A stretch of 64,000 bases of DNA. It comes from Isurus oxyrinchus (Eukaryota). Within the stretch, counting starts at the first letter, position 1. The number at the start of each line of letters is the position of its first letter. Shown one piece after another: positions 2,561-17,500 of this stretch. Both the position numbers and the translations under genes were made by a program. The DNA is taken from positions 87,916,001 through 87,980,000 of the forward strand of contig JANJGN010000004.1 of the NCBI GenBank assembly GCA_026770705.1, read 5' to 3'. Below the pieces are notes generated by a model. It ran no database searches. It saw nothing but the letters and a program-made list of their open reading frames with translations, and had not been told where the DNA came from.

Positions 2561-3133
2561 TAAAATACTTATCATGCTTTTTTTGATGTTTTTTGAAACC
2601 TACCTTAGTTTTCCATGAAAGGGGCAGGCACAGTTAAAACCAGGAGGCTTTTATTTTTCATGGCTAATGAAGCAGGATTGTTATCTGGACACCTTCTGGT
2701 GGCGAATAGTACGATTTTAAACTACTATATGTGAGCCAGAAGCTGTGTTTGTTTGCTGATGATTTGCAAAGAGGTTCTGTTCTCTGTAAAGGAGTACATG
2801 CCGTTGTTCCAAGAGTGAGGCAGCAATAGCCCAACCATCCCTACATTGTGACTTGGAATGAGCTGGAAAATACGTGGCATTGTCAGTAGAGCAAGAGAGA
2901 TATCTGGTGTGAGTATGAAGAAAAGATGCTGCAGCAGTAGGGAGATGGCTTGATTGAGCAGCTTCTCTTTTTATTCCTGTTGGTGTGGAATGGTTGAACC
3001 ATCAGACAGAGGGAGGGGCTTCCAACTGTCGTAAAAAAGGAGTTTGAGTTTCAGCAGACAAAGGTGTGAATGATTTCAGCAGCTGTCGTGCATTTTGTAG
3101 TTGTTTCCCCATGTCTGTCTACAAATAAGCTAT

Positions 3134-3709
3134 GGGGGCTTGGCCTAAATAGCCAAGTGGTTATGGTACTGGGTTTGGAACCCCAAAAATCAAGAGTTCA
3201 AATGTCACAAAGGCAAAACTATCAAGAGTTCAAATCTCACAATGGCAAACTATGAAACAATGTAACTTCATCTGAAACAGATGGAAACGGGTTTGTACTC
3301 GAAAGAAATCAAGAGTTCAAATCTCATAATGGTAAACTATGAAACAATGTAACTTCATCTGAAAAACAGATGGAAATGGGTTTGTACTCAAAAGAGTTAC
3401 AAATAAGCTATGGGGGCTTGGCCTAAATAGCCAAGTGGTTATGGTACTGGGTTTGTAACCCCAAGATTCAAGAGTTCAAATGTCACAATGGCAAACCATG
3501 AAACAATGTAACTTCATCTGAAACAGATGGAAATGGGTTTGTACTCGAAAGAGTTGCATCTATTTAACAAGCTTGGCCTAAATAGCCAAGTGGTTATGGT
3601 AATGGGTTTAGAATCCCAAAATCAAGAGTTCATATCTCACAATGGCAAACTATGAAACAATGTAACTTCATCTGAAACAGATGGAAACATGTTTGTACTT
3701 GAAAGAGTT
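3134..3709 (+). repeat. Array of tRNA-Thr(TGT)-derived SINE-like units: truncated unit 3134-3220, half units 3221-3307 and 3308-3398, full units 3412-3555 and 3571-3709
   Basis: A-box TAGCCAAGTGG, D-stem GCCA/TGGT, anticodon arm GGG-TTTGTAA-CCC (TGT) and B-box GAGTTCAAATC, then a body with hairpin CATCTG-AAA-CAGATG and tail TCGAAAGAGTT. Acceptor and T stems are mismatched, so this is not a functional tRNA. Confidence 0.85.
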
Positions 3710-3711
3710 AA

Positions 3712-4749
3712 ATGTTCCCCGAGCCGAAAGAAAAATTGAAAACCCAGAGGGTGGAGTGTCCGGGAGGGCTGGGAAAGGAGGAGGGGGCCTCGGAAATGGA
3801 GGTCTCCCTAGCCCCCAGCCTGACCCGGAAGAGGCGTCACGCTTCGGAGGAGGAAGTGGGCGATGCCCAAACTGAAGAAGTTGGGTGTGTCCCTTCCCCT
3901 GATGAAGAGGTGGTGGCGTCTCCACCCAGTAAAACCTCGCCCTGCCCTCTGGGAGAACCCGAAACACAAACCCCTACCACTGTTCCCCCTAACACTCTGC
4001 TGCAGTCCCCTGAACAGGGCTCCTCGGGGGTCACTGAGGGCACCTCCCTTGAGGTGGTGTCCGACTCCAGGGCACTTAATACCCCCGAGGTACTTTCTAG
4101 CTCGTCGGGGGATTGCAGGTTTGAAATTTTAAAGAATATAAATGGGTCATTGGGTGGCGGCGAAAAGGAGGGCCTTCCCGCTCCCTCCCAAACCTTGACA
4201 CCGGGCGTCCTATGTTTCGGTCAGGAGCTTGTCCTGAGCTCCCCGGACGACCCGGTGCCGGGAGGAGAGCGGGCATCAGAACTGCCGCTGCCCTCTGGCC
4301 CAAAAAGTTTCGAGGAGACCAGAGAGGACTCCTCTGGCCTTGATCCTGGGGGTGGGATCGAGGCTGAGATAGAGCCAGCTGGCAGCTCCGAATCAGCCCC
4401 CGTACTCAATGCGGGGGAGGGGTTGGAAGCTGGAGGCGACGACCCGGAAGAGGACGGGGTGTCGGTGATGAGCGTTGGGGATTACGCGGAGTCGCTCTCA
4501 GGCGAGGCGGTGGATCCCCTGGTGCCCTCCACTGACTCCCCCCTCATCCCCCCAAGGGAACTCCGGGATTTTTTGTCGGGGCACCGCGGTCGCCGAGACA
4601 GGGTTCAGTTGGCCTTGGACCGGTGGCATTCATTTCCGCTGGTGTTCTGGTCCACTCGCGAGGCTCTCAAGTCTCCTGAGTTGGATAGGAACGCGCGGCG
4701 GAGGGTCCAAACGTTTCTCGCTGGGCTCCTGAAGGAGAGGAAGGACTAA
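3712..4749 (+). pseudogene. Tx1-type ORF1, C-terminal part (acidic Pro/Ser/Glu-rich region plus basic C-terminal helical domain)
   Basis: 345-codon open frame directly upstream of ORF2, ending RELRDFL...LDRW...RRRVQTFLAGLLKERKD. No N-terminal zinc-knuckle region, consistent with truncation. Confidence 0.75.
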
Positions 4750-4805
4750 AAAGTCCTCTTCTTCTTTTTAATTACTTAAGGTGAATGTTTGATGTACCTT
4801 TGACA

Positions 4806-7800
4806 ATGAAGACGACTATAGCCAGCCTCAACATCCGCGGCAGCAGGGGCGCACAGCGCAGGTTCCAGAACTTCTCGGTCCTCAGGGACGGGAAGTATGC
4901 GTTGTGCCTCCTGCAAGAAACCCATACCGTTCCAGGAGACAAAGCCACGTGGCTCCTGGAGTGGCGAGGGGGGGTCTACATGAGTCACCTAGCCTCCAAT
5001 TCTGGCGGGGTGGCTATCTTGTTGGCCCCGCATTTTCAGCCGGAGATCTTGGGGGTCAAGGAGCTGGTGCCAGGCCGGTTGCTGCACCTGACTGTGCGTC
5101 TGGGGGGGGGGCGGTGCTTCACTTCGTGAATGTATACGCTCCCCTGGGCACGCAGCAGCAAGCGAGCTTCTTTGAAGAAGTGTCCACTCATCTCGGCTCC
5201 ATCGACGCTGGCGAGTGCATCGTCCTCGGGGGGGGATTTCAATTGCACCCTCGGGGTCCGGGACCGTCACGGTACCCCACACTGCACGCGAGGTGTGAGT
5301 AAGTTGCGGGACCTGGTCAGGTCCTTCGACTTAGTGGACGTCTGGCGAAATCGCCATCCTGACTCCAGCGTGTTCACCTTTGTGTCACCTGGAGTCGGAG
5401 CGTCCAGACTCGACCGCCTTTACATTTCAAAGGCGTACGTGTCCTGTGTTCCGGCTGCTTCTATACGGCAGGTTCCGTGCACGGACCACCATCTGGTGTG
5501 GGCGGAGCTCACTTCGTTCTGCGCTCGGACGGGGTCCGCGTACTGGCATTTTAATAACCTGTTGTTGGAAGACCAGCGGTTCCTGGACTCGATCCGTCGT
5601 TTCTGGGCCAGCTGGAGAAGGAAGCAGGGAGGCTTCCCCTCCTTGAGGCTATGGTGGGACGTGGGCAAGACTCACGTCCGAGTTTTCTGTCAAGAGTACG
5701 CGAAGGGGTCGACAAAGAGACGCAAATCCAGGGTCGAGGAGTTGGAGAAGGAGGTGCTCGACCTGGAGGCACATCTCCGTCAGCCTGATGCGGACCCGGC
5801 CCTGCGGTCGGTGTACGATGAGAAGAAGGGTGCGCTGCGGGACCTGCAACTGGTCGGGTCTCGGGGCGCGTTCGTGAGGTCGCGGATCCGGTTCCTCAGG
5901 GAGATGGACCGTGGCTCCCCCTTCTTCTACTCGCTGGAAAAAAGGCACGGGGTCCATCAGCAGCTCTTTACGCTGCTGGCCGACGACGGATCCCTTGTCT
6001 CAGATCCGGAGGGCATCAGGGCCATCGCCCGAGATTACTACACTGCCCTGTTCTCTCCGGATCCATCCAGCGAGGACGCTTGCAGAGTTTTGTGGGAGGA
6101 CCTGCCACAGGTCGGCCCGGACTGCGCCGGAAGGCTTGACTCCCCTATAAGTCTGGGGGAGCTGACTGGCGCACTCGACGGTCTTTCTAGGGGCAAATCC
6201 CCGGGACTAGACGGGCTGACCGTGGAGTTCTTCAGGACGTTCTGGGACGTCTTGGGGAGCGACTTCGCGGGGGTCCTGGGGGAGAGCATTGCTACCGGGG
6301 AGATGCCCCTTTCGTGGCGCAGGGCCGTGATTGCCGTGCTGCCGAAGAAGGGGGATCTCCGCCTTCTTAAAAACTGGCGCCCGGTCTCCCTCCTCAGCAC
6401 GGACTACAAAATCTTCGCCCGAGCCATGTCTTCCCGGCTCGGCACCGTGCTTGACCACATGATCCACCCTGACCAGTCCTACACCGTCCTGGACCAAACC
6501 ATTTATGATAATATCCATCTGGTCCGGGACATCATCCACTATTCCCAGAGGGCTGGTCTGTCGAGCGCCTTCCTGTCTCTCGATCAGGAGAAGGCGTTCG
6601 ACAGGGTGGATCACGGATACTTACTCGGAACTCTGCGAGCGTTTGGGTTCGGGACGCATTTTGTCGCCCGGATCTGACTTCTGTACACCGCCGCGGAGTG
6701 TCTATGAAGGTTAACGGGTCCCTGACGGCGCCCCTTCGCTTTGGGAGTGGGGTACGTCAGGGCTGCCCCCTGTCTGGCCAGTTGTATTCTATTTACGTGG
6801 AGCCTTTCCTGCGCCTCTTGTGGAGGAGGTTGTCGGGATTGGTCCTGCGCGGGCCGGGCATCGGGGTGGTCCTTTCAGCTTATGCCGATGACGTGCTCCT
6901 TATGTTTAGTGACCCGGCTGACCTGCGGAGGATGCGCGAGTGCCAGGAGGTCTACTCTGCTGCTTCTTCTGCCAGGATCAACTGGGGTAAATGTTCTGGA
7001 CTCCTGGTCGGTCAGTGGCAGATGGATTCCCTACCCGAGGAGCTCAGGCCTTTCACCTGGAGCAGGACCAGCCTCCTCTACCTGGGGGTCCATCTCTGCC
7101 CCGCTGAGGAATCCTGGCCGGCAAACTGGCAGGAACTGGAGACGAAAGTCACCGCTCGCCTGCGGCGCTGGACAGGACTGCTCCGAGTGCTATCTTACCG
7201 AGGTCGAGTTCTGGTCATAAACCAGCTGATCGCCGCCATGTTGTGGTATCGGCTGGTCACTTTGACCCCTCCCCCGGACTTTGTCACAAGAATCCAGAGA
7301 TTGTTAGTCGACTTCTTCTGGGACAAAAGATTGCACTGGGTCGCTGCCGAGGTTCTGAGTCTCCCGCTTAGGGAGGGCGGTCAGGCGCTAGTGTGCCTAC
7401 GCACACAGGTGGCGACTTTCCGCCTTCAAACCCTGCAGCGATACCTCTACGTCGAGCATCCTCCTAGATGGTGTGCCCTGACGACGTATTTCTTCCGTCA
7501 GGTGCACGGCCTGAATTATGACGTGCAGCTCCTGTTTATAGAACAGCTGGGCCTCGGTGGCTCCTTGCAGGCGTTGCCCATCTTTTACCAGGACCCGATC
7601 AAAGTCTGGAAAGTGGTCGCATCGTGACGCAGCTCTCCCCCGTCAGGAGTAGCGGCTATCGTCAGAGAGCGGCTGCTCAGGAATCCACTCCTCCGTCCCT
7701 TTCAGTGGTTGGCGGAGAGGAGGGCTGTGGCCGCAGGGGTGACCAGGATCGGGGACGTGCTGGGTGGCGGAGGACTGGGCTGGATGCTCCCGCAGGAGTT

Positions 7801-8698
7801 GGCGCGACGCGCGTCTGTGAGTGTCCAGGTCGCAGCCGATGCCATCCAAGACCTGAGAATGGTCGTGCTCGGACCCGACATTATTTTGTGTCTTGAGGTG
7901 GCCCAGGTGTACGGTGGTCTTCCGTCTGAACGTTCCCCTGTTCGGACGGAATTCCACATTGGCCCCAAGCCCCGAACCCTGCCTCGGGTGCTGGTGCCCC
8001 ACAATATGAGCTGCCTCGGGGACATGCCCTCCGTGCCTTTTGGCACAGCAAAGAGGGGCTTTTTGTACGGACTGCTGCCGCACACCTTCCATTTTCTCGC
8101 CCTTGTCCGCCGCCCGGACATGCCCTGGCGTGCCTTGTTGCCGTCTGGCGGCAGAGGCCCCCGATGGGAGGCCCTCTACGGAGGTGTCCTCCCCCTTTCT
8201 ATCGGGGACCTGGGTTGGAGGGTGTTGCATGCAGCAGTCCCCTATAATAAGAGGATGCATAGGTTCATGGACTCTCAGGACACGTGCCCTTTTTGCGGTC
8301 TTGTGGAGTCCGTGGAACATGTATACATAGGGTGTTGTAGGCTGCACTCCCTTTTCAGTTATTTGAAAAACCTTTTATTGATGTTTTGTTTGCACTTCAG
8401 CCCCACGCTCCTGATCTATGGGCACCCGGTGCGGAAGGGGGTCGGGAAGGAGGAGGACCTCCTCGTGAACCTGCTCCTGGGCCTGGCCAAGTTGGCCATT
8501 AACAGGTCCAGGCAGCGGGCGATCGACGGGGGAGTCCCGCCCAATTGTTTGTCCCTCTTCCGCGGCTACGTTCACTGCTGGATGTCCCTGGAGAGGGAGC
8601 ACACGGTGTCTGCTGGCACTCTCGAGGCCTTCCGTGCTCGGTGGGCACCGCGGGGACTGGGGTGTTTTGTTGACCCCTTTAATCACATTTTGATTTAA
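4806..8698 (+). pseudogene. Tx1-type ORF2 (APE endonuclease-RT-zinc finger), disrupted
   Basis: Endonuclease: MKTTIASLNIRG..LLQETH, GGDFNC, SRLDRLY, TDHH. RT: KSPGLDGL, NWRPVSLLSTDYKI, LDQEKAFDRV, GVRQGCPLSG, AYADD. Zinc finger: CPFCGLVESVEHVYIGC. Frameshifts at ~5105, ~5230 and ~6700; stops at 6675 and 7625. Confidence 0.93.
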
Positions 8699-8807
8699 TG
8701 TTTGTAAGTTTCCTTTAAACTTTGTTCTTGGTTTTACAGCTGACCTGAATTAGGGGCTGTGCCTGATTTATCCCGATTTTGTTGATTTGGTTTTCATTTA
8801 AAAGATT

Positions 8808-9384
8808 ATCAAGAGTTCAAATCTCACAATGGCAAACTATGAAACAATGTAACTTCATCTGAAACAGATGGAAACGGGTTTGTGCTCGAAAGAGTATCAA
8901 GAGTTCAAATCTCACAATGGCAAACTATGAAACAATGTAACTTCATCTGAAACAGATGGAAACGGGTTTGTACTCGAAAGAAATCAAGAGTTCAAATCTC
9001 ATAATGGTAAACTATGAAACAATGTAACTTCATCTGAAAAACAGATGGAAATGGGTTTGTACTCAAAAGAGTTACAAATAAGCTATGGGGGCTTGGCCTA
9101 AATAGCCAAGTGGTTATGGTACTGGGTTTGTAACCCCAAGATTCAAGAGTTCAAATGTCACAATGGCAAACCATGAAACAATGTAACTTCATTTGAAACA
9201 GATGGAAATGGGTTTGTACTCGAAAGAGTTGCATCTACTTAACAAGCTTGGCCTAAATAGCCAAGTTGTTATGGTAATGGGTTTAGAACCCCAAAATCAA
9301 GAGTTCATATCTCACAATGGCAAACTATGAAACAATGTAACTTCATCTGAAACAGATGGAAACATGTTTGTACTTGAAAGAGTT
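8808..9384 (+). repeat. Second array of the tRNA-Thr-derived units: halves 8808-8895, 8896-8982, 8983-9073; full units 9087-9230, 9246-9384
   Basis: 8896-9384 is nearly identical to 3221-3709 at offset 5675, including private variants (CTCATAATGGTAAA, GAAAAACAGA) and both spacers. Confidence 0.88.
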
Positions 9385-9386
9385 AA

Positions 9387-10424
9387 ATGTTCCCCGAGCC
9401 GAAAGAAAAATTGAAAACCCAGAGGGTGGAGTGTCCGGGAGGGCTGGGAAAGGAGGAGGGGGCCTTGGAAATGGAGGTCTCCCTAGCCCCCAGCCTGACC
9501 CAGAAGAGGCGTCACGCTTCGGAGGAGGAAGTGGGCGATGCCCAAACTGAAGAAGTTGGGTGTGTCCCTTCCCCTGATGAAGAGGTGGTGGCGTCTCCAC
9601 CCAGTAAAACCTCGCCCTGCCCTCTGGGAGAACCCGAAACACATACCCCTACCACTGTTCCCCCTAACACTCTGCTGCAGTCCCCTGAACAGGGCTCCTC
9701 GGGGGTCACTGAGGGCACCTCCCTTGAGGTGGTGTCTGACTCCAGGGCACTTAATACCCCCGGGGTACTTTCTAGCTCGTCGGGGGATTGCAGGTTTGAA
9801 ATTTTAAAGAATATAAATGGGTCATTGGGTGGCGGCGAAAAGGAGGGCCTTCCCGCTCCCTCCCAAACCTTGACACTGGGCGTCCTATGTTTAGGTCAGG
9901 AGCTTGTCCTGAGCTCCCCGGACGACCCAGTGCCGGGAGGAGAGCGGGCATCAGAACTGCCGCTGCCCTCTGGCCCAAAAAGTTTCGAGGAGACCAGAGA
10001 GGACTCCTCTGGCCTTGATCCTGGGGGTGGGATCGAGGCTGAGATAGAGCCAGCTGGCAGCTCCGAATCAGCCCCCGTACTCAATGCGGGGGAGGGGTCG
10101 GAAGCTGGAGGCGACGACCCGGAAGAGGACGGGGTGTCGGTGGTGAGCGTTGGGGATTACGCGGAGTAGCTCTCAGGCGAGGCGGTGGATCCCCTGGTGC
10201 CCTCCACTGACTCCCCCCTCATCCCCCCAAGGGAACTCCGGGACTTTTTGTCGGGGCACCGCGGTCGCCGAGACAGGGTTCAGTTGGCCTTGGACCGGTG
10301 GCATTCATTTCCGCTGGTGTTCTGGTCCACTCGCGAGGCTCTCAAGTCTCCTGAGTTGGATAGGAACGCGCGGCGGAGGGTCCAAACGTTTCTCGCTGGG
10401 CTCCTGAAGGAGAGGAAGGACTAA
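9387..10424 (+). pseudogene. Tx1-type ORF1 C-terminal part, copy 2 (premature TAG at 10167-10169)
   Basis: ORFs 9387-10169 and 10185-10424 are collinear with 3712-4749; TCG has become TAG. Confidence 0.75.
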
Positions 10425-10480
10425 AAAGTCCTCTTCTTCTTTTTAATTACTTAAGGTGAATGTTTGATGTACCTTTGACA

Positions 10481-13400
10481 ATGAAGACGACTATAGCCAG
10501 CCTCAACATCCGCGGCAGCAGGGGCGCACAGCGCAGGTTCCAGAACTTCTCGGTTCTCAGGGACGGGAAGTATGCGTTGTGCCTCCTGCAAGAAACCCAT
10601 ACCCTTCCGGGAGACGAAGCCACGTGGCTCCTGGAGTGGCGAGGGGGGGTCTACATGAGTCACCTAGCCTCCAATTCTGGCGGGGTGGCTATCTTGTTGG
10701 CCCCGCATTTTCAGCCGGAGATCTTGGGGGTCAAGGAGCTGGTGCCAGGCCGGTTGCTGCACCTGACTGTGCGTCTGGGGGGGGGGCGGTGCTTCACTTC
10801 GTGAATGTATACGCTCCCCTGGGCACGCAGCAGCAAGCGAGCTTCTTTGAAGAAGTGTCCACTCATCTCGGCTCCATCGACGCTGGCGAGTGCATCGTCC
10901 TCGGGGGGGATTTCAATTGCACCCTCGGGGTCCGGGACCGTCACGGTACCCCGCACTGCACGCGAGGTGTGAGTAAGTTGCGGGACCTGGTCAGGTCCTT
11001 CGACTTAGTGGACGTCTGGCAAAATCTCCATCCTGACTCCATCGTGTTCACCTTTGTGTCACCTGGAGTCGGAGCGTCCAGACTCGACCGCCTTTACGTT
11101 TCAAAGGCGTACGTGTCCTGCGTTCCGGCTGCTTCTATACGGCAGGTTCCGTGCACGGACCACCGTCTGGTGTGGGCGGAGCTCACTTCGTTCTGCGCTC
11201 GGACGGGGTCCGCGTACTGGCATTTTAATAACCTGTTGTTGGAAGACCAGCGGTTCCTGGACTCGTTCCGTCGTTTCTGGGCCAGCTGGAGAAGGAAGCA
11301 GGGAGGCTTCCCCTCCTTGAGGCTATGGTGGGACGTGGGCAAGACTCACGTCCGAGTTTTCTGTCAAGAGTACGCGAAGGGGTCGACAAAGAGACGCAAA
11401 TCCAGGGTCGAGGAGTTGGAGAAGGAGGTGCTCGACCTGGAGGCACGTCTCCGTCAGCCTGATGCGGACCCGGCCCTGCGGTCGGTGTACGATGAGAAGA
11501 AGGGCGCGCTGCGGTACCTGCAACTGGTCGGGTCTCGGGGTGCGTTCGTGAGGTCGCGGATCCGGTTCCTCAGGGAGATGGACCGTGGCTCCCCCTTCTT
11601 CTACTCGCTGGAAAAAAGGCACGGGGTCCATCAGCAGCTCTTTACGCTGCTGGCCGACGACGGATCCCTTGTCTCAGATCCGGAGGGCATCAGGGCCATC
11701 GCCCGAGATTACTACACTGCCCTGTTCTCTCCGGATACGTCCAGCGAGGACGCTTGCAGAGTTTTGTGGGAGGACCTGCCGCAGGTCGGCCCGGACTGCG
11801 CCGGAAGGCTTGACTCCCCTATAAGTCTGGGGGAGCTGACTGGCGCACTCAACGGTCTTTCTAGGGGCAAATCCCCGGGACTAGACAGGCTGACCGTGGA
11901 GTTCTTCAGGACGTTCTGGGACGTCTTGGGGAGCGACTTCGCGGGGGTCCTGGGGGAGAGTATCGCTACCGGGGAGATGCCCCTTTCGTGGTGCAGGGCC
12001 GTGATTGCCGTGCTGCCGAAGAAGGGGGATCTCCGCCTTCTTAAAAACTGGCGCCCGGTCTCCCTCCTCAGCACGGACTACAAAATCTTCGCCCGAGCCA
12101 TGTCTTCCCGGCTCGGCACCGTGCTGGACCACATGATCCACCCTGACCAGTCCTACACCGTCCCGGACCGAACCATTTATGATAATATCCATCTGGTCCG
12201 GGACATCATCCACTATTCCCAGAGGGCTGGTCTGTCGAGCACCTTCCTGTCTCTCGATCAGGAGAAGGCGTTCGACAGGGTGGATCACGGATACTTACTC
12301 GGAACTCTGCGAGCGTTTGGGTTCGGGACGCATTTTGTCGCCCGGATCTGACTTCTGTACACCGCCGCGGAGTGTCTATGAAGGTTAACGGGTCCCTGAC
12401 GGCGCCCCTTCGCTTTGGGAGTGGGGTACGTCAGGGCTGCCCCCTGTCTGGCCAGTTGTATTCTATTTGCGTGGAGCCTTTCCTGCGCCTCTTGTGGAGG
12501 AGGTTGTCGGGATTGGTCCTGCGCGGGCCGGGCATCGGGGTGGTCCTTTCAGCTTATGCCGATGACGTGCTCCTTATGTTTAGTGACCCGGCTGACCTGC
12601 GGAGGATGCGCGAGTGCCAGGAGGTCTACTCTGCCGCTTCTTCTGCCAGGATCAACTGGGGTAAATGTTCTGGACTCCTGGTCAGTCAGTGGTAGATGGA
12701 TCCCCTACCCGAGGAGCTCAGGCCTTTCACCTGGAGCAGGACCAGCCTCCTCTACCTGGGGGTCCATCTCTGCCCCGCTGAGGAATCCTGGCCGGCAAAC
12801 TGGCAGGAACTGGAGACGAAAGTCACCGCTCGCCTGCGGCGCTGGACAGGACTGCTCCGAGTGCTATCTTACCGAGGTCGAGTTCTGGTCATAAACCAGC
12901 TGATCGCCGCCATGTTGTGGTATCGGCTGGTCACTTTGACCCCTCCCCCGGACTTTGTCACAAGAATCCAGAGATTGTTAGTCGACTTCTTCTGGGACAA
13001 AAGATTGCACTGGGTCGCTGCCGAGGTTCTGAGTCTCCCGCTTAGGGAGGGCGGTCAGGCGCTAGTGTGCCTACGCACACAGGTGGCGACTTTCCACGTT
13101 CAAACCCTGCAGCGATACCTCTACGTCGAGCCTCCTCCTAGATGGTGTGCCCTGACGACGTATTTCTTCCGTCAGGTGCACGGCCTGAATTATGACGTGC
13201 AGCTCCTGTTTATAGAACAGCTGGGCCTCGGTGGCTCCTTGCAGGCGTTGCCCATCTTTTACCAGGACCCGATCAAAGTCTGGAAAGTGGTCGCATCGTG
13301 ACGCAGCTCTCCCCCGTCAGGAGTAGCGGCTATCGTCAGAGAGCGGCTGCTCAGGAATCCACCCCTCCGTCCCTTTCAGTGGTTGGCGGAGAGGAAGGCT

Positions 13401-14372
13401 GTGGCCGCAGGGGTGACCAGGATCGGGGACGTGCTGGGTGGCGGAGGACTGGGCTGGATGCTCCCGCAGGAGTTGGCGCGACGCGCGTCTGTGAGTGTCC
13501 AGGTCGCAGCCGATGCCATCCAAGACCTGAGAACGGTCGTGCTCGGACCCGACGTTATTTTGGGTCTTGAGGTGGCCCAGGTGCACGGTGGTCTTCCGTC
13601 TGAACGTTCCCCTGTTCGGACGGAATTTCACATTGGCCCCAAGCCCCGAACCCTGCCTCGGGTGCTGGTGCCCCACAATATGAGCCGCCTCGGGGACATG
13701 CCCTCCGTGCCTTTTGGCACAGCAAAGAGGGGCTTTTTGTACGGACTGCTGCCGCACACCTTCCATTTTCTCGCCCTTGTCCGCCGCCCGGACACGCCCT
13801 GGCGTGCCTTGTTGCCGTCTGGCGGCAGAGGCCCCCGATGGGAGGCCCTCTACGGAGGTGTCCTCCCCCTTTCTATCGGGGACCTGGGTTGGAGGGTGTT
13901 GCATGCAGCAGTCCCCTATAATAAGAGGATGCATAGGTTCATGGACTCTCAGGACACGTGCCCTTTTTGCGGTCTTGTGGAGTCCGTGGAACATGTATAC
14001 ATAGGGTGTTGTAGGCTGCACTCCCTTTTTAGTTATTTGAAAAACCTTTTATTGATGTTTTGTTTGCACTTCAGCCCCACGCTCCTGATCTATGGGCACC
14101 CGGTGCGGAAGGGGGTCGGGAAGGAGGAAGACCTCCTCATGAACCTGCTCCTGGGCCTGGCCAAGTTGGCCATTAACAGGTCCAGGCAGCGGGCGATCGA
14201 CGGGGGAGTCCCGCCCGATTGTTTGTCCCTCTTCCGCGGCTACGTTCGCTGCCGGATGTCCCTGGAGAGGGAGCACACGGTGTCTGCTGGCACTCTCGAG
14301 GCCTTCCGTGCTCGGTGGGCACCGCGGGGACTGGGGTGTTTTGTTGACCCCTTTAATCACATTTTGATTTAA
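10481..14372 (+). pseudogene. Tx1-type ORF2, copy 2, disrupted
   Basis: Same endonuclease, RT and zinc-finger motifs as copy 1. Shares four lesions with copy 1 and has a private TAG at 12693-12695. Confidence 0.93.
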
Positions 14373-14481
14373 AGTTTGTAAGTTTCCTTTAAACTTTGTT
14401 CTTGGTTTTGCAGCTGACCTGAATTAGGGGCTGTGCCTGATTTATCCCGATTTTGTTGATTTGGTTTTCATTTAAAAGATT

Positions 14482-14570
14482 ATCAAGAGTTCAAATCTCA
14501 CAATGGCAAACTATGAAACAATGTAACTTCATCTGAAACAGATGGAAATGGGTTTGTGCTTGAAAGAGTT
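14482..14570 (+). repeat. 3' half of the tRNA-derived unit, followed by the locus TSD ACAAATAAGCTAT (14571-14583)
   Basis: ATCAAGAGTTCAAAT...TGAAAGAGTT, then the 13-mer also seen at 3121-3133. Confidence 0.88.
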
Positions 14571-17500
14571 ACAAATAAGCTATTTCACAAAAAAAGTAGA
14601 TGGAATAACACTGAACACTGCCTCCATCACGATAAAATAAAGGAATAAGCATTGTGCAAAAAGACAGAAGTTCTGTTCAAAAAACCAAAAATAAGGATCT
14701 TTCTAATTGGCAATACCAGCCTGTCTGCCTTTCCCTAAAGACAGAAAGTGCCTAAGTGGGAGTTGTGGGATCAGTATAACACTTGGATGTGGAAATGTTC
14801 AGCAGGGTGGGCAGAATCTGGAGAGATAAACAGGATTAACATACTAAATTTTAACACTTTGATCTGCTCACAGCAGGGGAAACTGGTAGCTGGTCAGGAA
14901 CACAAAAGTTTGTGCTGTGGGTTTCTCAGTGGTTCTCTAACTGAGCCACAGCATTAGCATCCCATTGGTTTCCTAACCAATCATAGTAGACAGTCATGGT
15001 GTTGATCCAAAACTGGGTGTTGGAAATTCACTATTTTTATGAATCCTACATGGGTGTGAATGTCAAGAGAGAGCCAGCTGCCTGACAGATGGAGTGTCAG
15101 TGAAGACTGGCTGCCCCATGGTTCTCAGATGGATCCCTGGAAATCATGCTGCAGGCTCTGTTCTTCTAAAATGTGAGGAAGAAAGGTGCCGTAAAACAAT
15201 CAGACCTGGCTAGAAGTAATGTTCCCTCACTCGTGGATACAATGCCAGAAGAGGTTTAATGACCTATACATTCAAATGCAGACTTCCTCTCTATGCCTTC
15301 CCCAGCTTTCTCCTGCACATTACTCCTAAGACCAACAAACTTGTAGATGCACACATGCCTTCTTTGTCGTGACACCTTCGCACATCTCCATCTGACTGGC
15401 CACCACTAACATTCACCATCATCTTATACCCATCCCTATCAGTGACCCTCCAAAAATGTTGTCCTTCCATCCTCTTGAAACAATCCACAGCTTAAACAGC
15501 TTGATTTCTTCTTGGAGAAGATAATACAGGACAGCATGGAGAGGCAGAGAACCAGGAGTGACCCAAAGGTCATAACAACCCTGACAGCAACACAAGAGGA
15601 AGCACTAGAGAGAAGCTGAGTCTTGGTGTGCCTGGCTATTAGAAAGGTAGGGATCTTACAGTTACCTGGTAACAGAATTAAATTCAGCACTGCCAATGGC
15701 AGACTACACTCACTCACATAGATTTGATGTCACTAGCAACTGATATATGATGGTCAGCATAATGACGACTTAGAGCTTTCTTACCTTGTCAGCTCTAATT
15801 CATGTTTTTCATTTCCCACAGGTCCCAGAAGTGTTGCTGAGCAGCCAGCGTTGGAGGAGGATGAAAACCCCTCAGAGGAGGGCACTCACTCTGAGGAAGC
15901 ACCAACTCATGTGCGCCCTCCCCCATCTCAAATACACACGCCTTGGTGAAGCCACAAAAACAGGGAGTTGGATAGTCAGATGTTGAAGTGCACATCACAA
16001 ATTAGCATGGGCAGATGCTGGAAACAGCTATACAGTGAAGGGTGCACATTGACAACCCAAGCTCTGTTCAGCCGGATGCGAATGCTGAGCTTTGGGAGTC
16101 ATCAATGAAGAGGACTATTCTGACGCAGCAGCAGAAAATGTGTGAGGCTCTGTCAGCATTTCCAGCTGCACTGTGCACGATTAGAGAGAGATTGAAGGAT
16201 TCCATTTCTAGCCTGAGTTCTATGATGTCTTAGACATTCACACTGAGTCTCCATCCATGCCACCCGAATGGATCATCAGACATGGTAGTACACTGAGTAA
16301 ATGCAGGAGCTCATCAATGGCCAGCAGACTCAGACTCTACACCTTAAGCAGGATGGAGGAAATCCTCATCTTGGCCTGCCTCACTGAAGTGCAGCAGAGT
16401 GTTCACCAGCTTTTGGCTTCCAGAGGAGTGTGGGCAGGCCATGAGAGGGAAGAAGGAGAAATGACAGATGGAAGTGGGGGCTCTGCTCAAAGTGCTTCCT
16501 CTCCTCACTGCTTCCCACCACCGCGTTTCCCATTACCCAAGCCCACACCTGCCTGCTTTGTCAGAGTCTCAAATGCTATCACCTACCCAATGGCCAAGTT
16601 TGCCCCTTCACAGTTGCAGGTGGAACAGTCACAAGCTCCAAAATTACATTGGCCATGAGCATCTGAGCAGTCAGGTCAGGGAAAATGAGTAGCCTGACTC
16701 TAGCACTGATGAAGTGGTTGCACCACATAGGGGTAAAAAGAAAAGAAGGGAAAAAGATTTGTAGTTGCTTAAGTTGCTTATTGTTTAACACTTTCTTAAA
16801 TTATCACATTTCTGGTCAGTCTTTCTCAACTGTAAATTTTATTGCAAAGTTCCATTGTCCCATCCTCAGCACCTGAACCTCTGGCCAAGTGCCCTACAGT
16901 ATAGTGGAGAATGCTTTGCTGAGAGTTGAAATGGATATTGGGTCTCTGTATGTGGGACGGATTATTGATTGTGGGACTGTTTTTGCTGAGGTCTGGGGTA
17001 CAGCTGCAGTGATTTCAGATTTGGTTTGCCAGATGGCCACACTGCCTCAGGATAGCTGAATTTCACCTTAATCCTGATGCATCCAGGCATCTGAATTACA
17101 TTTCCAGCATCACAAGGGTTTACTCGATGAAGCTTCCTGTGCTCAAAATGGCTTCCATTATACCTTTCCTGAGCTTCAGTGGTAGGACCTTGAACCTGTC
17201 AGTCTTTCCTCAGGCACAATGTACTATTGGAGAGAGTGGAGAATTCTGTCTCTATCCTGTGTGTCATGACTTCTCAGGCCTTCGCACTGATGCCTGTGCC
17301 CATGGAAAGAGTGGCCACCTCCCTCCAGCACCAAAGGCAGCAATAAACCAAGTACATGCTGTCCCTGACCAATGAGCTGCAGTCAGTCTGCCAGCATAAA
17401 CAGGACGAAGGAAATAATTTCCTTGGCCATTCAATGCTCAGAGGACTTTGACCAAGAACATCTGAGCAGCCAGAGCTGGAAAACGAGCAGGCTGCCTCAA

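What the first reader, a model, noticed from the sequence alone, without database searches (positions are those of the whole stretch)
3120..14583. Candidate self-targeting Tx1 LINE / tRNA-Thr SINE system: the SINE is both cargo and target
Seen: the 3' end of each Tx1 copy (8807, 14481) joins the same position in the unit's tRNA head, immediately before ATCAAGAGTTCAAAT at the variable-loop/T-arm boundary. Unit 3' ends join that same position (3307|3308, 8895|8896, 8982|8983), producing ~88-bp half units. A 31-32-bp stretch starting at this site occurs both before (3189-3220) and after (14482-14512) the whole insert, like a long TSD. Established: many Tx1-clade families are sequence-specific and target multicopy RNA genes or other repeats. 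Inference: this family's endonuclease cuts a defined site in a SINE that its own RT also mobilises, so the LINE disperses its own safe landing sites and the SINE builds arrays by inserting into itself. Caveat: the tandem duplication means there is only one independent LINE junction and about two independent unit junctions here.
Basis: partly seen in the sequence, partly recalled or inferred. Interest (0 to 1): 0.9.

Follow-up and report, generated by a model that had tools for sequence, protein, structure and literature searches.

The report
Shark LINE wearing SINE-derived ends
A dead shark jumping gene (an L1/Tx1-type LINE) is joined at both ends to pieces of a small tRNA-like SINE, and sequencing reads show that this joint is typical of the whole LINE family, but it more likely marks a tail the LINE inherited from the SINE than repeated homing into the SINE.

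Summary
A 14-mer (TACAAATAAGCTAT) brackets and subdivides the block. Inside are SINE units, ~88-bp half units and a degenerate L1/Tx1-like LINE. A 5,675-bp segment is present twice at 98.7% identity. Every half unit, and the DNA after each LINE 3' UTR, starts at ATCAAGAG.

One read-laying run added three things:
- The SINE is an abundant, dispersed element. Its 5' flanks are unlike one another, and its 3' ends read ...GAAAGAGT + TACAA + unlike DNA.
- Roughly a tenth of SINE copies sit next to the 14-mer.
- The LINE 3' UTR has no comparable loose end at 8807, so most family members run on into the half unit.

LINE ends and SINE ends therefore have very different flanks. "Same machinery, SINE both cargo and target" cannot be the main mode.

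Best reading (0.45): the half unit became the LINE's own tail, probably after one landing or template switch at that SINE position. The composite now lands at TACAA-type sites, the 14-mer above all. Main rival (0.30): this LINE family does home into the SINE, but another LINE moves the SINE.

No independent genomic copies could be fetched. Earlier notes of this scan describe the same system on other DNA of this genome.

The parts
3120..3133 (.). 14-mer TACAAATAAGCTAT, copy 1 (left flank of the block; target-site-duplication-like)
   Evidence: 4 exact copies in the window against 0.02 expected. Reads cover the 14-mer beside heads at depth ~720, against 0 reads at 3041-3099.
3134..3188 (+). SINE head 'head0' (the 5' part of the tRNA-like region, including the D-arm / A-box region)
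   Evidence: 53 of 55 positions identical to the U1 head. Rfam tRNA hit at 3143-3215, 17.6 bits, below the gathering score.
3189..3220 (+). P31+T: a duplicated copy of the first 31 nt of a half unit
   Evidence: 27-29 of 32 positions identical to the start of every half unit. It begins at the same nucleotide as all the half units.
3221..3307 (+). Half unit H1. Its 3' end is shortened to ...GAAAGAA.
3308..3397 (+). Half unit H2, a variant type, followed by the 14-mer
   Evidence: Read depth 950 at 3362.
3398..3411 (.). 14-mer, copy 2 (internal)
3412..3555 (+). Full SINE unit U1 (head plus 3' half), close to the read majority
   Evidence: Depth 7,515 at 3467. Loose ends lie before 3415/3416 and behind 3555. 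Rfam tRNA hit at 3421-3493, anticodon loop TTTGTAA.
3556..3570 (+). 15-nt spacer between U1 and U2. It recurs in the genome.
   Evidence: Depth 1,323 at 3562. At 3556, G>A in 1,859 of 1,961 X20 reads.
3571..3710 (+). SINE unit U2. It lacks the first ~4 nt and is complete at its 3' end. It abuts the LINE ORF1 start codon.
   Evidence: 90.7% identical to U1. Rfam tRNA hit at 3576-3647, 18.7 bits. The junction reads GAGTTA|AATG.
3711..8807 (+). LINE copy 1, degenerate. ORF1 is 3712-4749. The ORF2 pieces run to the stop at 8698. The 3' UTR is 8699-8807 and ends TTTAAAAGATT.
   Evidence: ORFs. Pfam RVT_1 and zf-RVT. Similarity to the SINE unit is absent before 8808.
8808..8895 (+). Half unit H3a after LINE copy 1
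   Evidence: 93.6% identical to the U1 3' half; 85 of 88 to H1.
8896..14481 (+). Second copy of the 5,675-bp repeat: H1', H2', the 14-mer (9073-9086), U1' (9087-9230), spacer, U2' (9246-9385) and LINE copy 2 (9386-14481)
   Evidence: 73 differences in 5,675 bp. Shared stops at 5129/10804, 6677/12351 and 7627/13301.
14482..14569 (+). Half unit H3b after LINE copy 2
14570..14583 (.). 14-mer, copy 4 (right flank of the block)

Best explanation
This is a LINE-SINE partner pair in which the LINE carries SINE-derived ends. The SINE is an ordinary dispersed element, probably transcribed by RNA polymerase III. Its A-box side lies in the head and its B box / T arm lies in the 3' half.

Once, or a few times, a LINE ending ...TTTAAAAGATT became joined to a SINE exactly at the variable-loop / T-arm boundary. 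The cause was either a landing there or a template switch by the reverse transcriptase. The 88-nt SINE 3' half then became the 3' tail of that LINE lineage. In the same way, a whole SINE unit (U2) sits directly before the ORF1 start codon.

SINE RNA and LINE RNA would then end in the same tail (...GAAAGAGT, followed by TACAA) and use the same target-primed reverse transcription. They land at TACAA-type sites, most often the 14-mer TACAAATAAGCTAT, which is copied again at each insertion.

On this reading the locus formed in three steps:
1. Two insertions at one 14-mer site. One was a SINE with a duplicated 3' half. The other was a composite: U1, spacer, U2, LINE, half unit.
2. Decay of the LINE.
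3. A 5.7-kb tandem duplication whose break points lie at two TACAA/ATCAA-type sites.

Shown: the anatomy, the genome-wide joint, the dispersed SINE flanks, and the recurrence of the 14-mer. Inferred: the single capture event, the RNA 3' end at the end of the half unit, and the priming mechanism.
For: 1. LINE and SINE 3' flanks differ sharply in the raw reads of X20.
- SINE 3' ends give loose ends at 3555 (1,114 reads), 3710 (548), 3306 (347) and 8981 (622). Their consensus starts (GT)TACAA and then has only 0.34-0.44 agreement.
- No row at 8807 appears among the six shown for that run, although mean depth there is 2,686. I estimate about 1,800 informative reads, so at most about 19% of LINE ends can leave the half unit there.
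- One nicking and copying machinery should give LINE and SINE the same flanks. It does so only if the LINE's real end is the half unit's end.

2. In this window the LINE-plus-half-unit is followed by the same 14-mer that follows SINE unit H2.

3. The 14-mer recurs genome-wide next to the SINE. Depth is 719-728 at 3406-3410, against 0 reads at 3041, 3057 and 3099.

4. Composite forms recur. Depth is 1,323 on the U1-U2 spacer, 997 on U2, 950 on H2, and 496 just inside the LINE 5' end. This suggests composites are copied as units.

5. From the bin and point depths, I estimate that 3' halves exceed heads by roughly 4,000-5,900 depth units. That is more than the LINE 3' UTR depth of 2,686. A tail borne by every LINE copy would produce such an excess.

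6. There is a precedent. Crocodilian Tx1-Mar LINEs carry U1/U2 heads shared with their SINEU partners, share a DNA-transposon target with them, and acquire 5' additions by template switching (PMC4494074, sections 16, 17 and 19 read).

7. Earlier notes of this scan report Tx1 LINE plus SINE stacks at one 14/15-nt Harbinger site at several other loci of this genome. These are leads only; I could not check that their 14-mer is the one seen here.
Against: 1. The shared part begins inside the tRNA-like fold, and the T arm / B box lies in the half unit. The LINE must therefore have taken it from the SINE.

2. The 31-nt duplication (3189-3220) starts at exactly the same nucleotide. The chance of that for a random tandem duplication within a 143-nt unit is about 2% (my estimate).

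3. The joint of the 5.7-kb duplication (8895|8896) again puts a SINE-type 3' end against ATCAAGAG. Unequal crossover between H1 and H3 would give a period of 5,587 bp, not the observed 5,675.

4. The last 25 nt of the LINE 3' UTR weakly resemble the last 25 nt of the SINE: score 6, reached by 138 of 6,000 background 25-mers. That is what a true LINE 3' terminus at 8807 would look like.

5. The bound on loose ends at 8807 rests on my assumption that table 7 lists the six best-supported rows per run. 8,344 rows were not shown.

6. The raw reads come from 'organism B', a close relative or another individual, not certainly the source of the window.
Confidence: 0.45

Rival explanations
1. Active homing. 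The endonuclease of this LINE family nicks the SINE at the variable-loop / T-arm boundary, and also at the equivalent joint behind a SINE 3' end. Every LINE copy is then an independent insertion into a SINE. The SINE's own spread to TACAA sites and to the 14-mer would be driven mainly by another Tx1 family of this genome.
For: - Several junctions in the window have ATCAAGAG on the right and a different left partner: LINE end GATT| at 8807, SINE end GAAAGAA| at 3307, SINE end GAAAGAGT| at 8895 (the duplication joint), and the 31-nt duplication at 3220|3221.
- The tRNA-like fold is continuous across the site.
- Most LINE 3' UTRs run into the half unit genome-wide, and intact units abound.
- The LINE sits cleanly between a SINE 3' end (U2) and a half-unit start, with no loss of sequence.
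- The 25 nt before the internal site resemble the SINE's own last 25 nt: score 10, reached by 1 of 6,000 background 25-mers. The site therefore mimics an element-end/target joint.
- Many Tx1-clade families are target-specific, and some target other transposons (PMC4494074, introduction and section 15 passages).
- The LINE 3' UTR end weakly resembles the SINE end.
Against: - SINE ends mostly do not lie at this site, so 'cargo and target of the same machinery' fails and a second mobiliser is needed.
- H1-H2 and U1-spacer-U2 seem to be amplified composites, since read depth on their private variants is 950-1,323. They are therefore not independent local hits.
- The similarity between head end and tail end also gives a homology route, by slippage or template switching, to half-unit repeats without any nick.
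- 3' halves outnumber heads (my estimate), which plain homing does not predict.
- No 5' junction of a truncated LINE copy could be examined.
Confidence: 0.3
2. The chimera is re-made at each jump. Reverse transcription starts on the abundant SINE RNA tail. At the AAGAT-type homology at the end of the head, it switches to the 3' end of LINE RNA (...AAAAGATT). Each LINE insertion thus acquires a fresh SINE 3' half, and half-unit repeats arise from the same slippage.
For: - The head end, the SINE tail end and the LINE 3' UTR end share a GGnTTT...AAGAnT pattern just before the joint: head against tail at 1 of 6,000 background 25-mers, tail against LINE at 138 of 6,000.
- U1 and the LINE share AAGATT right at the joint.
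- Template jumping is the accepted source of 5' additions in Tx1-partnered SINEs (PMC4494074, sections 17 and 19).
Against: - Head against LINE end is not significant (1,940 of 6,000).
- The model needs a very regular switch point in thousands of copies.
- No direct evidence supports it.
- It does not explain the 31-nt duplication or the joint of the 5.7-kb duplication.
Confidence: 0.1
3. A purely local DNA rearrangement or an assembly artefact. The half-unit array and the LINE joint would come from unequal recombination, or from misassembly of repeats at this one locus.
For: The region is repeat-rich, and a 5.7-kb tandem duplication is present.
Against: - The two copies differ at 73 positions, so they are not a collapsed or doubled assembly.
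- The joint types recur in reads and contigs of four runs from two organism labels.
- A contig of run X5 covers the left flank and runs into the head.
Confidence: 0.03

Closest known systems
Tx1-Mar LINEs and SINEU SINEs of crocodilians (Kojima 2015, PMC4494074; abstract, find passages and sections 16, 17, 19 read)
   Same: A Tx1-type LINE and a small partner SINE share sequence at the 5' end of the LINE and share a preferred target inside a DNA transposon. Insertions stack there. 5' additions arise by template switching. The SINE's target preference can be weaker than the LINE's.
   Different: Here the shared module is tRNA-derived, not snRNA-derived. The LINE also carries 88 nt of the SINE at its 3' side, beginning inside the tRNA-like fold. 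In crocodilians no LINE sharing the SINEU-1 3' terminus was found (section 19).
Tx1L in Tx1D of Xenopus laevis (as cited in the introduction of PMC4494074; primary papers not read)
   Same: A Tx1-clade LINE found inside another, non-autonomous repeat at a defined site.
   Different: Tx1D is a DNA transposon that the LINE does not mobilise. Here the host repeat is a retroposon that shares the LINE's tail, which makes homing and tail-sharing hard to tell apart.
Canonical LINE-SINE pairs with a common 3' tail (e.g. UnaL2/UnaSINE1, HER1/HE1; table and text of the review PMC3747384, find passages only)
   Same: The SINE consists of a tRNA-like head plus a 3' part that is also found at the 3' end of a LINE. 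The copies are dispersed.
   Different: In the canonical case the tail comes from the LINE and lies behind the tRNA-related part. Here the shared part starts at the T arm, so the direction of transfer must have been from SINE to LINE.

Membership tests
L1/Tx1-type (APE-endonuclease) non-LTR retrotransposon | Domain order: APE-type endonuclease, then reverse transcriptase, then a C-terminal zinc-binding region | tested here: met
   - RVT_1: E 2.5e-17.
- zf-RVT: E 1.3e-4, 23 bits, below the cut-off of 27.5.
- Exo_endo_phos: E 0.0038, 17.4 bits, below the cut-off of 24.5.
- Human LINE-1 ORF2p structures match residues 72-586 at E 1e-45.
- Homologues carry PF03372 plus PF00078.
The endonuclease and zinc-region hits are sub-threshold on this decayed copy.
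Tx1 clade specifically | The reverse transcriptase groups with Tx1, Keno, Kibi and Koshi in a tree rather than with L1 proper | not tested
The best hits are unnamed turtle proteins (50-57% identity) and a Heterodontus francisci protein (65%).
Tx1 clade specifically | Target-specific insertion | tested here: inconclusive
   The 3' flank is uniform in reads, but that is equally expected from an inherited tail. The 14-mer recurs beside the SINE.
tRNA-derived SINE (SINE2 type) | A tRNA-like head with A- and B-box regions | tested here: inconclusive
   Rfam's tRNA model gives full-length alignments on 3 units at 14.2-18.7 bits, below the gathering score of 29. ARAGORN finds 0 tRNAs. The D-arm and T-loop letters fit the box consensus as I recall it.
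tRNA-derived SINE (SINE2 type) | Many dispersed copies with sharp ends and unrelated flanks | tested here: met
   - 2,547 X20 reads with unlike DNA before 3415/3416.
- At least 2,631 X20 reads with unlike DNA after the 3' end.
- Depth 7,515 at 3467, against 0 at the single-copy flank positions.
tRNA-derived SINE (SINE2 type) | A 3' part shared with a partner LINE | tested here: met
   88-94 nt at 93.6% identity follow each LINE 3' UTR. No similarity exists upstream of 8808.
   There is no loose-end row at 8807 among those shown, and intact units are abundant. This is not discriminating, because an inherited tail gives the same picture.
   The window holds only one independent LINE.
   SINE 3' ends mostly run into TACAA plus unlike DNA, or into the 14-mer, not into ATCAAGAG.

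The most novel reading that the evidence does not exclude
The variable-loop / T-arm boundary of this SINE is a real, actively used nicking site of a Tx1-type endonuclease. The thousands of SINE copies would then serve as dispersed safe landing pads for a LINE family. The site mimics the element's own 3' joint, since the head end resembles the tail end, so every insertion makes a new pad. That would be the first LINE known to home into a SINE related to its own tail.
Probability: 0.3. Interest if true: 0.75.

Novelty: new variant of a known kind. Interest (0 to 1): 0.5.

Why it matters
Tx1-clade LINEs are the main vertebrate example of retrotransposons that choose their landing sites, and little is known about how they change targets and recruit SINE partners.

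Here a LINE carries a whole SINE unit in front of its first ORF and the SINE's T-arm half behind its 3' UTR. That shows sequence moving from SINE to LINE, the reverse of the textbook direction. It may preserve a former target as the element's own ends.

If homing into the SINE proves real, it would be a self-propagating safe-harbour strategy. If not, the case warns that a uniform 3' flank alone does not demonstrate site specificity.

Tried and rejected
1. Independent genomic copies.
- A protein-based scan of metagenome contigs matched 153 pattern stretches, but none was confirmed.
- A DNA scan with the last 20 nt of the LINE 3' UTR returned 22 loci, L001-L022. BLASTN found no similarity between any of them and 3100-9000, so all are chance matches.

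2. A hidden, decayed SINE head in the LINE 3' UTR.
- In register, 26 of 55 positions are identical. That level is reached by 1 of 9,974 LINE-body windows and 33 of 97,892 other windows. About nine registers were looked at.
- Local alignment of the 3' UTR against the whole unit is no better than background: 598 of 1,500 and 740 of 1,500 windows score as well.
- I left this as unproven.

3. Harbinger identity of the flanks. No ORF of 50 aa or more with a recognisable family lies next to the block. The frames that end at the stop codons inside the 14-mer are full of stops. Not shown here.

4. A ribozyme or other known RNA at the site. Rfam at E up to 10 gave only weak tRNA hits and noise.

5. SINE RNA fold. 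The z-score is -1.95, and 10 of 200 shuffles fold as well, so it is not remarkable.

6. Subfamily markers of LINE-linked against head-linked half units, taken from tables 3 and 7. I dropped this because the tables are truncated and reads are placed on the best-matching unit.

7. Literature. Four full-text searches found no description of a Tx1 LINE joined to a tRNA-derived SINE in sharks. Supplements were closed, and the supplementary figures S3-S6 of PMC4494074 on target sites may bear on the comparison. I read sections 16, 17 and 19 and find passages of PMC4494074, and find passages only of PMC3747384 and PMC3706591.

8. I built no consensus and no repaired reading frame.

Full report
WHAT IS THERE. 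From left to right:
- the 14-mer TACAAATAAGCTAT (3120-3133);
- a SINE head (3134-3188);
- a 31-nt partial 3' half plus T (3189-3220);
- half units H1 (3221-3307) and H2 (3308-3397);
- the 14-mer again (3398-3411);
- a full unit U1 (3412-3555);
- a 15-nt spacer;
- a second unit U2 (3571-3710), which lacks its first ~4 nt;
- a LINE (3711-8807);
- half unit H3 (8808-8895).

The stretch 3221-8895 is then repeated (8896-14570) with 73 differences in 5,675 bp, and the 14-mer closes the block (14570-14583). The 14-mer occurs 4 times against 0.02 expected. The ATCAAGAGTTCAAAT motif with up to 2 mismatches occurs 13 times against 0.31 expected, 11 of them in this block. BLASTN finds no other unit or LINE copy in the 64 kb.

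Half units are 80-87 of 88-91 positions identical to each other. H1 equals H1' and H2 equals H2'.

THE LINE.
- Domains. Its ORF pieces carry RVT_1 (E 2.5e-17). A zf-RVT match and an Exo_endo_phos match both fall below their cut-offs. Human LINE-1 ORF2p structures match at E 1e-45.
- Relatives. The nearest database proteins are unnamed turtle proteins (50-57% identity), a horn-shark protein (65%), and two short environmental ones (74% and 80%).
- Decay. Both copies share stops at 5129/10804, 6677/12351 and 7627/13301. Both also lack a G that most reads have behind 6704. The LINE was therefore already dead when the 5.7-kb duplication happened.
- 5' end. ORF1's ATG (3712) follows the 3' end of U2 directly (GAGTTA|AATG). 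The only 5' leader the LINE has is a SINE unit.

THE SINE. ARAGORN calls no tRNA. Rfam's tRNA model aligns full-length to three units at 14.2-18.7 bits, against a gathering score of 29. In U1 the anticodon loop reads TTTGTAA. In all three alignments the T arm and the 3' acceptor strand lie inside the half unit. The joint with the LINE therefore falls inside the tRNA-like fold, so the half unit is SINE-derived. Similarity between the LINE and the unit stops abruptly at 8807|8808.

READS. Runs were found. X1 (organism A, contigs) is probably the source. X5 (contigs), X20 and X24 (raw reads) are organism B. A contig of X5 covers the left flank with three differences and enters the head. One call laid them on 3000-8999 at 85% likeness or more.

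In X20, with the two strand columns summed:
- Depth is 0 at flank positions 3041, 3057 and 3099.
- Depth is about 410 at the LINE 5' end and 2,686 in the 3' UTR, a typical 5'-truncation gradient.
- Depth is 4,865 in the U1 bin and 7,515 at 3467.
- Before 3415/3416, 861 + 1,686 reads run into unlike DNA (agreement 0.34). That is the SINE 5' end, a few bases before the tRNA-like start.
- Behind 3555, 3710, 3306 and 8981, 1,114 + 548 + 347 + 622 reads run on with (GT)TACAA and then unlike DNA (agreement 0.34-0.44). So the SINE ends ...GAAAGAGT followed by TACAA.
- No row at 8807 is among the six shown for either raw-read run. The smallest rows shown have 347 reads (X20) and 465 reads (X24).

I assume the table lists the best-supported rows per run; 8,344 rows were not shown. 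On that assumption, with about 1,800 informative reads, at most about a fifth of LINE 3' UTR ends leave the half unit.

Composite forms also recur:
- Depth is 719-728 on the right part of the internal 14-mer.
- Depth is 1,323 on the U1-U2 spacer. Its G at 3556 reads A in 1,859 of 1,961 reads.
- Depth is 997 on U2, 950 on H2, and 496 just inside the LINE.

But it does not discriminate, because a LINE whose own tail is the SINE 3' half gives the same result.

The informative point is the asymmetry. LINE 3' UTRs are almost always followed by the half unit. SINE 3' ends are mostly followed by TACAA plus unrelated DNA, and in roughly a tenth of cases by the 14-mer. One endonuclease and reverse transcriptase acting on both RNAs should give both the same flanks. 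So one of two things must be true:
(a) The LINE RNA really ends at the end of the half unit. LINE and SINE then share tail and targets, and the 8807 joint is inherited.
(b) This LINE family homes into the SINE, but something else moves the SINE.
'Cargo and target of the same machinery' is not the main mode.

My rough sum of bin and point depths puts 3' halves at 12,600-13,400 depth units and heads at 7,500-8,600. That excess is at least as large as the LINE 3' UTR depth and fits (a) somewhat better. The estimate depends on how reads were shared among the six half units of the stretch.

EVIDENCE THAT KEEPS HOMING ALIVE.
- The T arm in the shared part means the LINE met the SINE at this nucleotide at least once.
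- The 31-nt duplication starts at the same nucleotide.
- The one novel joint of the 5.7-kb duplication (8895|8896) again places a SINE-type end against ATCAAGAG. Its flanks allow no cyclic shift, and crossover between H1 and H3 would give a period of 5,587 bp rather than 5,675.
- The last 25 nt of the LINE 3' UTR weakly resemble the SINE's last 25 nt (138 of 6,000 background 25-mers score as well).

A new observation cuts both ways. The 25 nt before the internal site resemble the SINE's own last 25 nt (1 of 6,000). The site thus mimics an element-end/target joint, which a site-specific enzyme could recognise. The same repeat also gives a homology route, by slippage or reverse-transcriptase template switching, to half-unit repeats without any nick.

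COMPARISON WITH WHAT IS KNOWN. The closest system is Kojima's crocodilian Tx1-Mar/SINEU pair. Those LINEs have heads shared with their SINEs, share a target in a DNA transposon, stack there, and gain 5' additions by template switching (PMC4494074).

Earlier notes of this scan report the same shark LINE/SINE association on other pieces of this genome. One follow-up judged homing 'only weakly supported'. Several report stacks of a Tx1 LINE and a SINE at one 14/15-nt Harbinger site. These notes led me to read the 14-mer as a target. The read depth on it is my own check, but I could not show that the flanks here are Harbinger.

Four literature searches found no description of a LINE joined to a tRNA-derived SINE in this way.

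VERDICT.
- Observation: confirmed.
- Interpretation: partly supported.
- Best reading: a LINE lineage that has taken SINE pieces as its ends and now travels with them (0.45).
- Main rival: true homing by a specialist LINE family (0.30).
- Novelty: a new variant of a known kind. Interest is moderate.

Noticed in passing
window 3443-3467 vs 3530-3554: The 25 nt at the end of the SINE head (the anticodon-arm region up to the internal site) resemble the SINE's own last 25 nt. They share TGGGTTTGTA, and only 1 of 6,000 background 25-mers scores as well. The SINE therefore contains an internal repeat that frames the half unit.
   Followed up: partly
window 3710-3714 and 9385-9389: The ORF1 start codon of the LINE directly follows the 3' end of a complete SINE unit, so the LINE has no 5' UTR of its own. 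Earlier notes report U1-snRNA-headed Tx1 LINEs in the same genome.
   Followed up: partly
window 3556-3570: The 15-nt spacer between U1 and U2 is not unique DNA. X20 read depth on it is 1,323, and its first base differs from the read majority. This suggests an amplified dimeric SINE form, or a second recurrent target.
   Followed up: no
window 8753-8807: The last 55 nt of the LINE 3' UTR match the SINE head in register at 26 of 55 positions, starting GGGGCT. The nominal probability is about 0.002 after allowing for the registers tried, but local alignment does not support it.
   Followed up: yes
window 5228 and 6704: Copy 1 has a private extra G at 5228; most reads and copy 2 lack it. Both copies lack a G that most reads have behind 6704. 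These are datable frameshifts relative to the duplication.
   Followed up: partly
I did not examine it.
   Followed up: no
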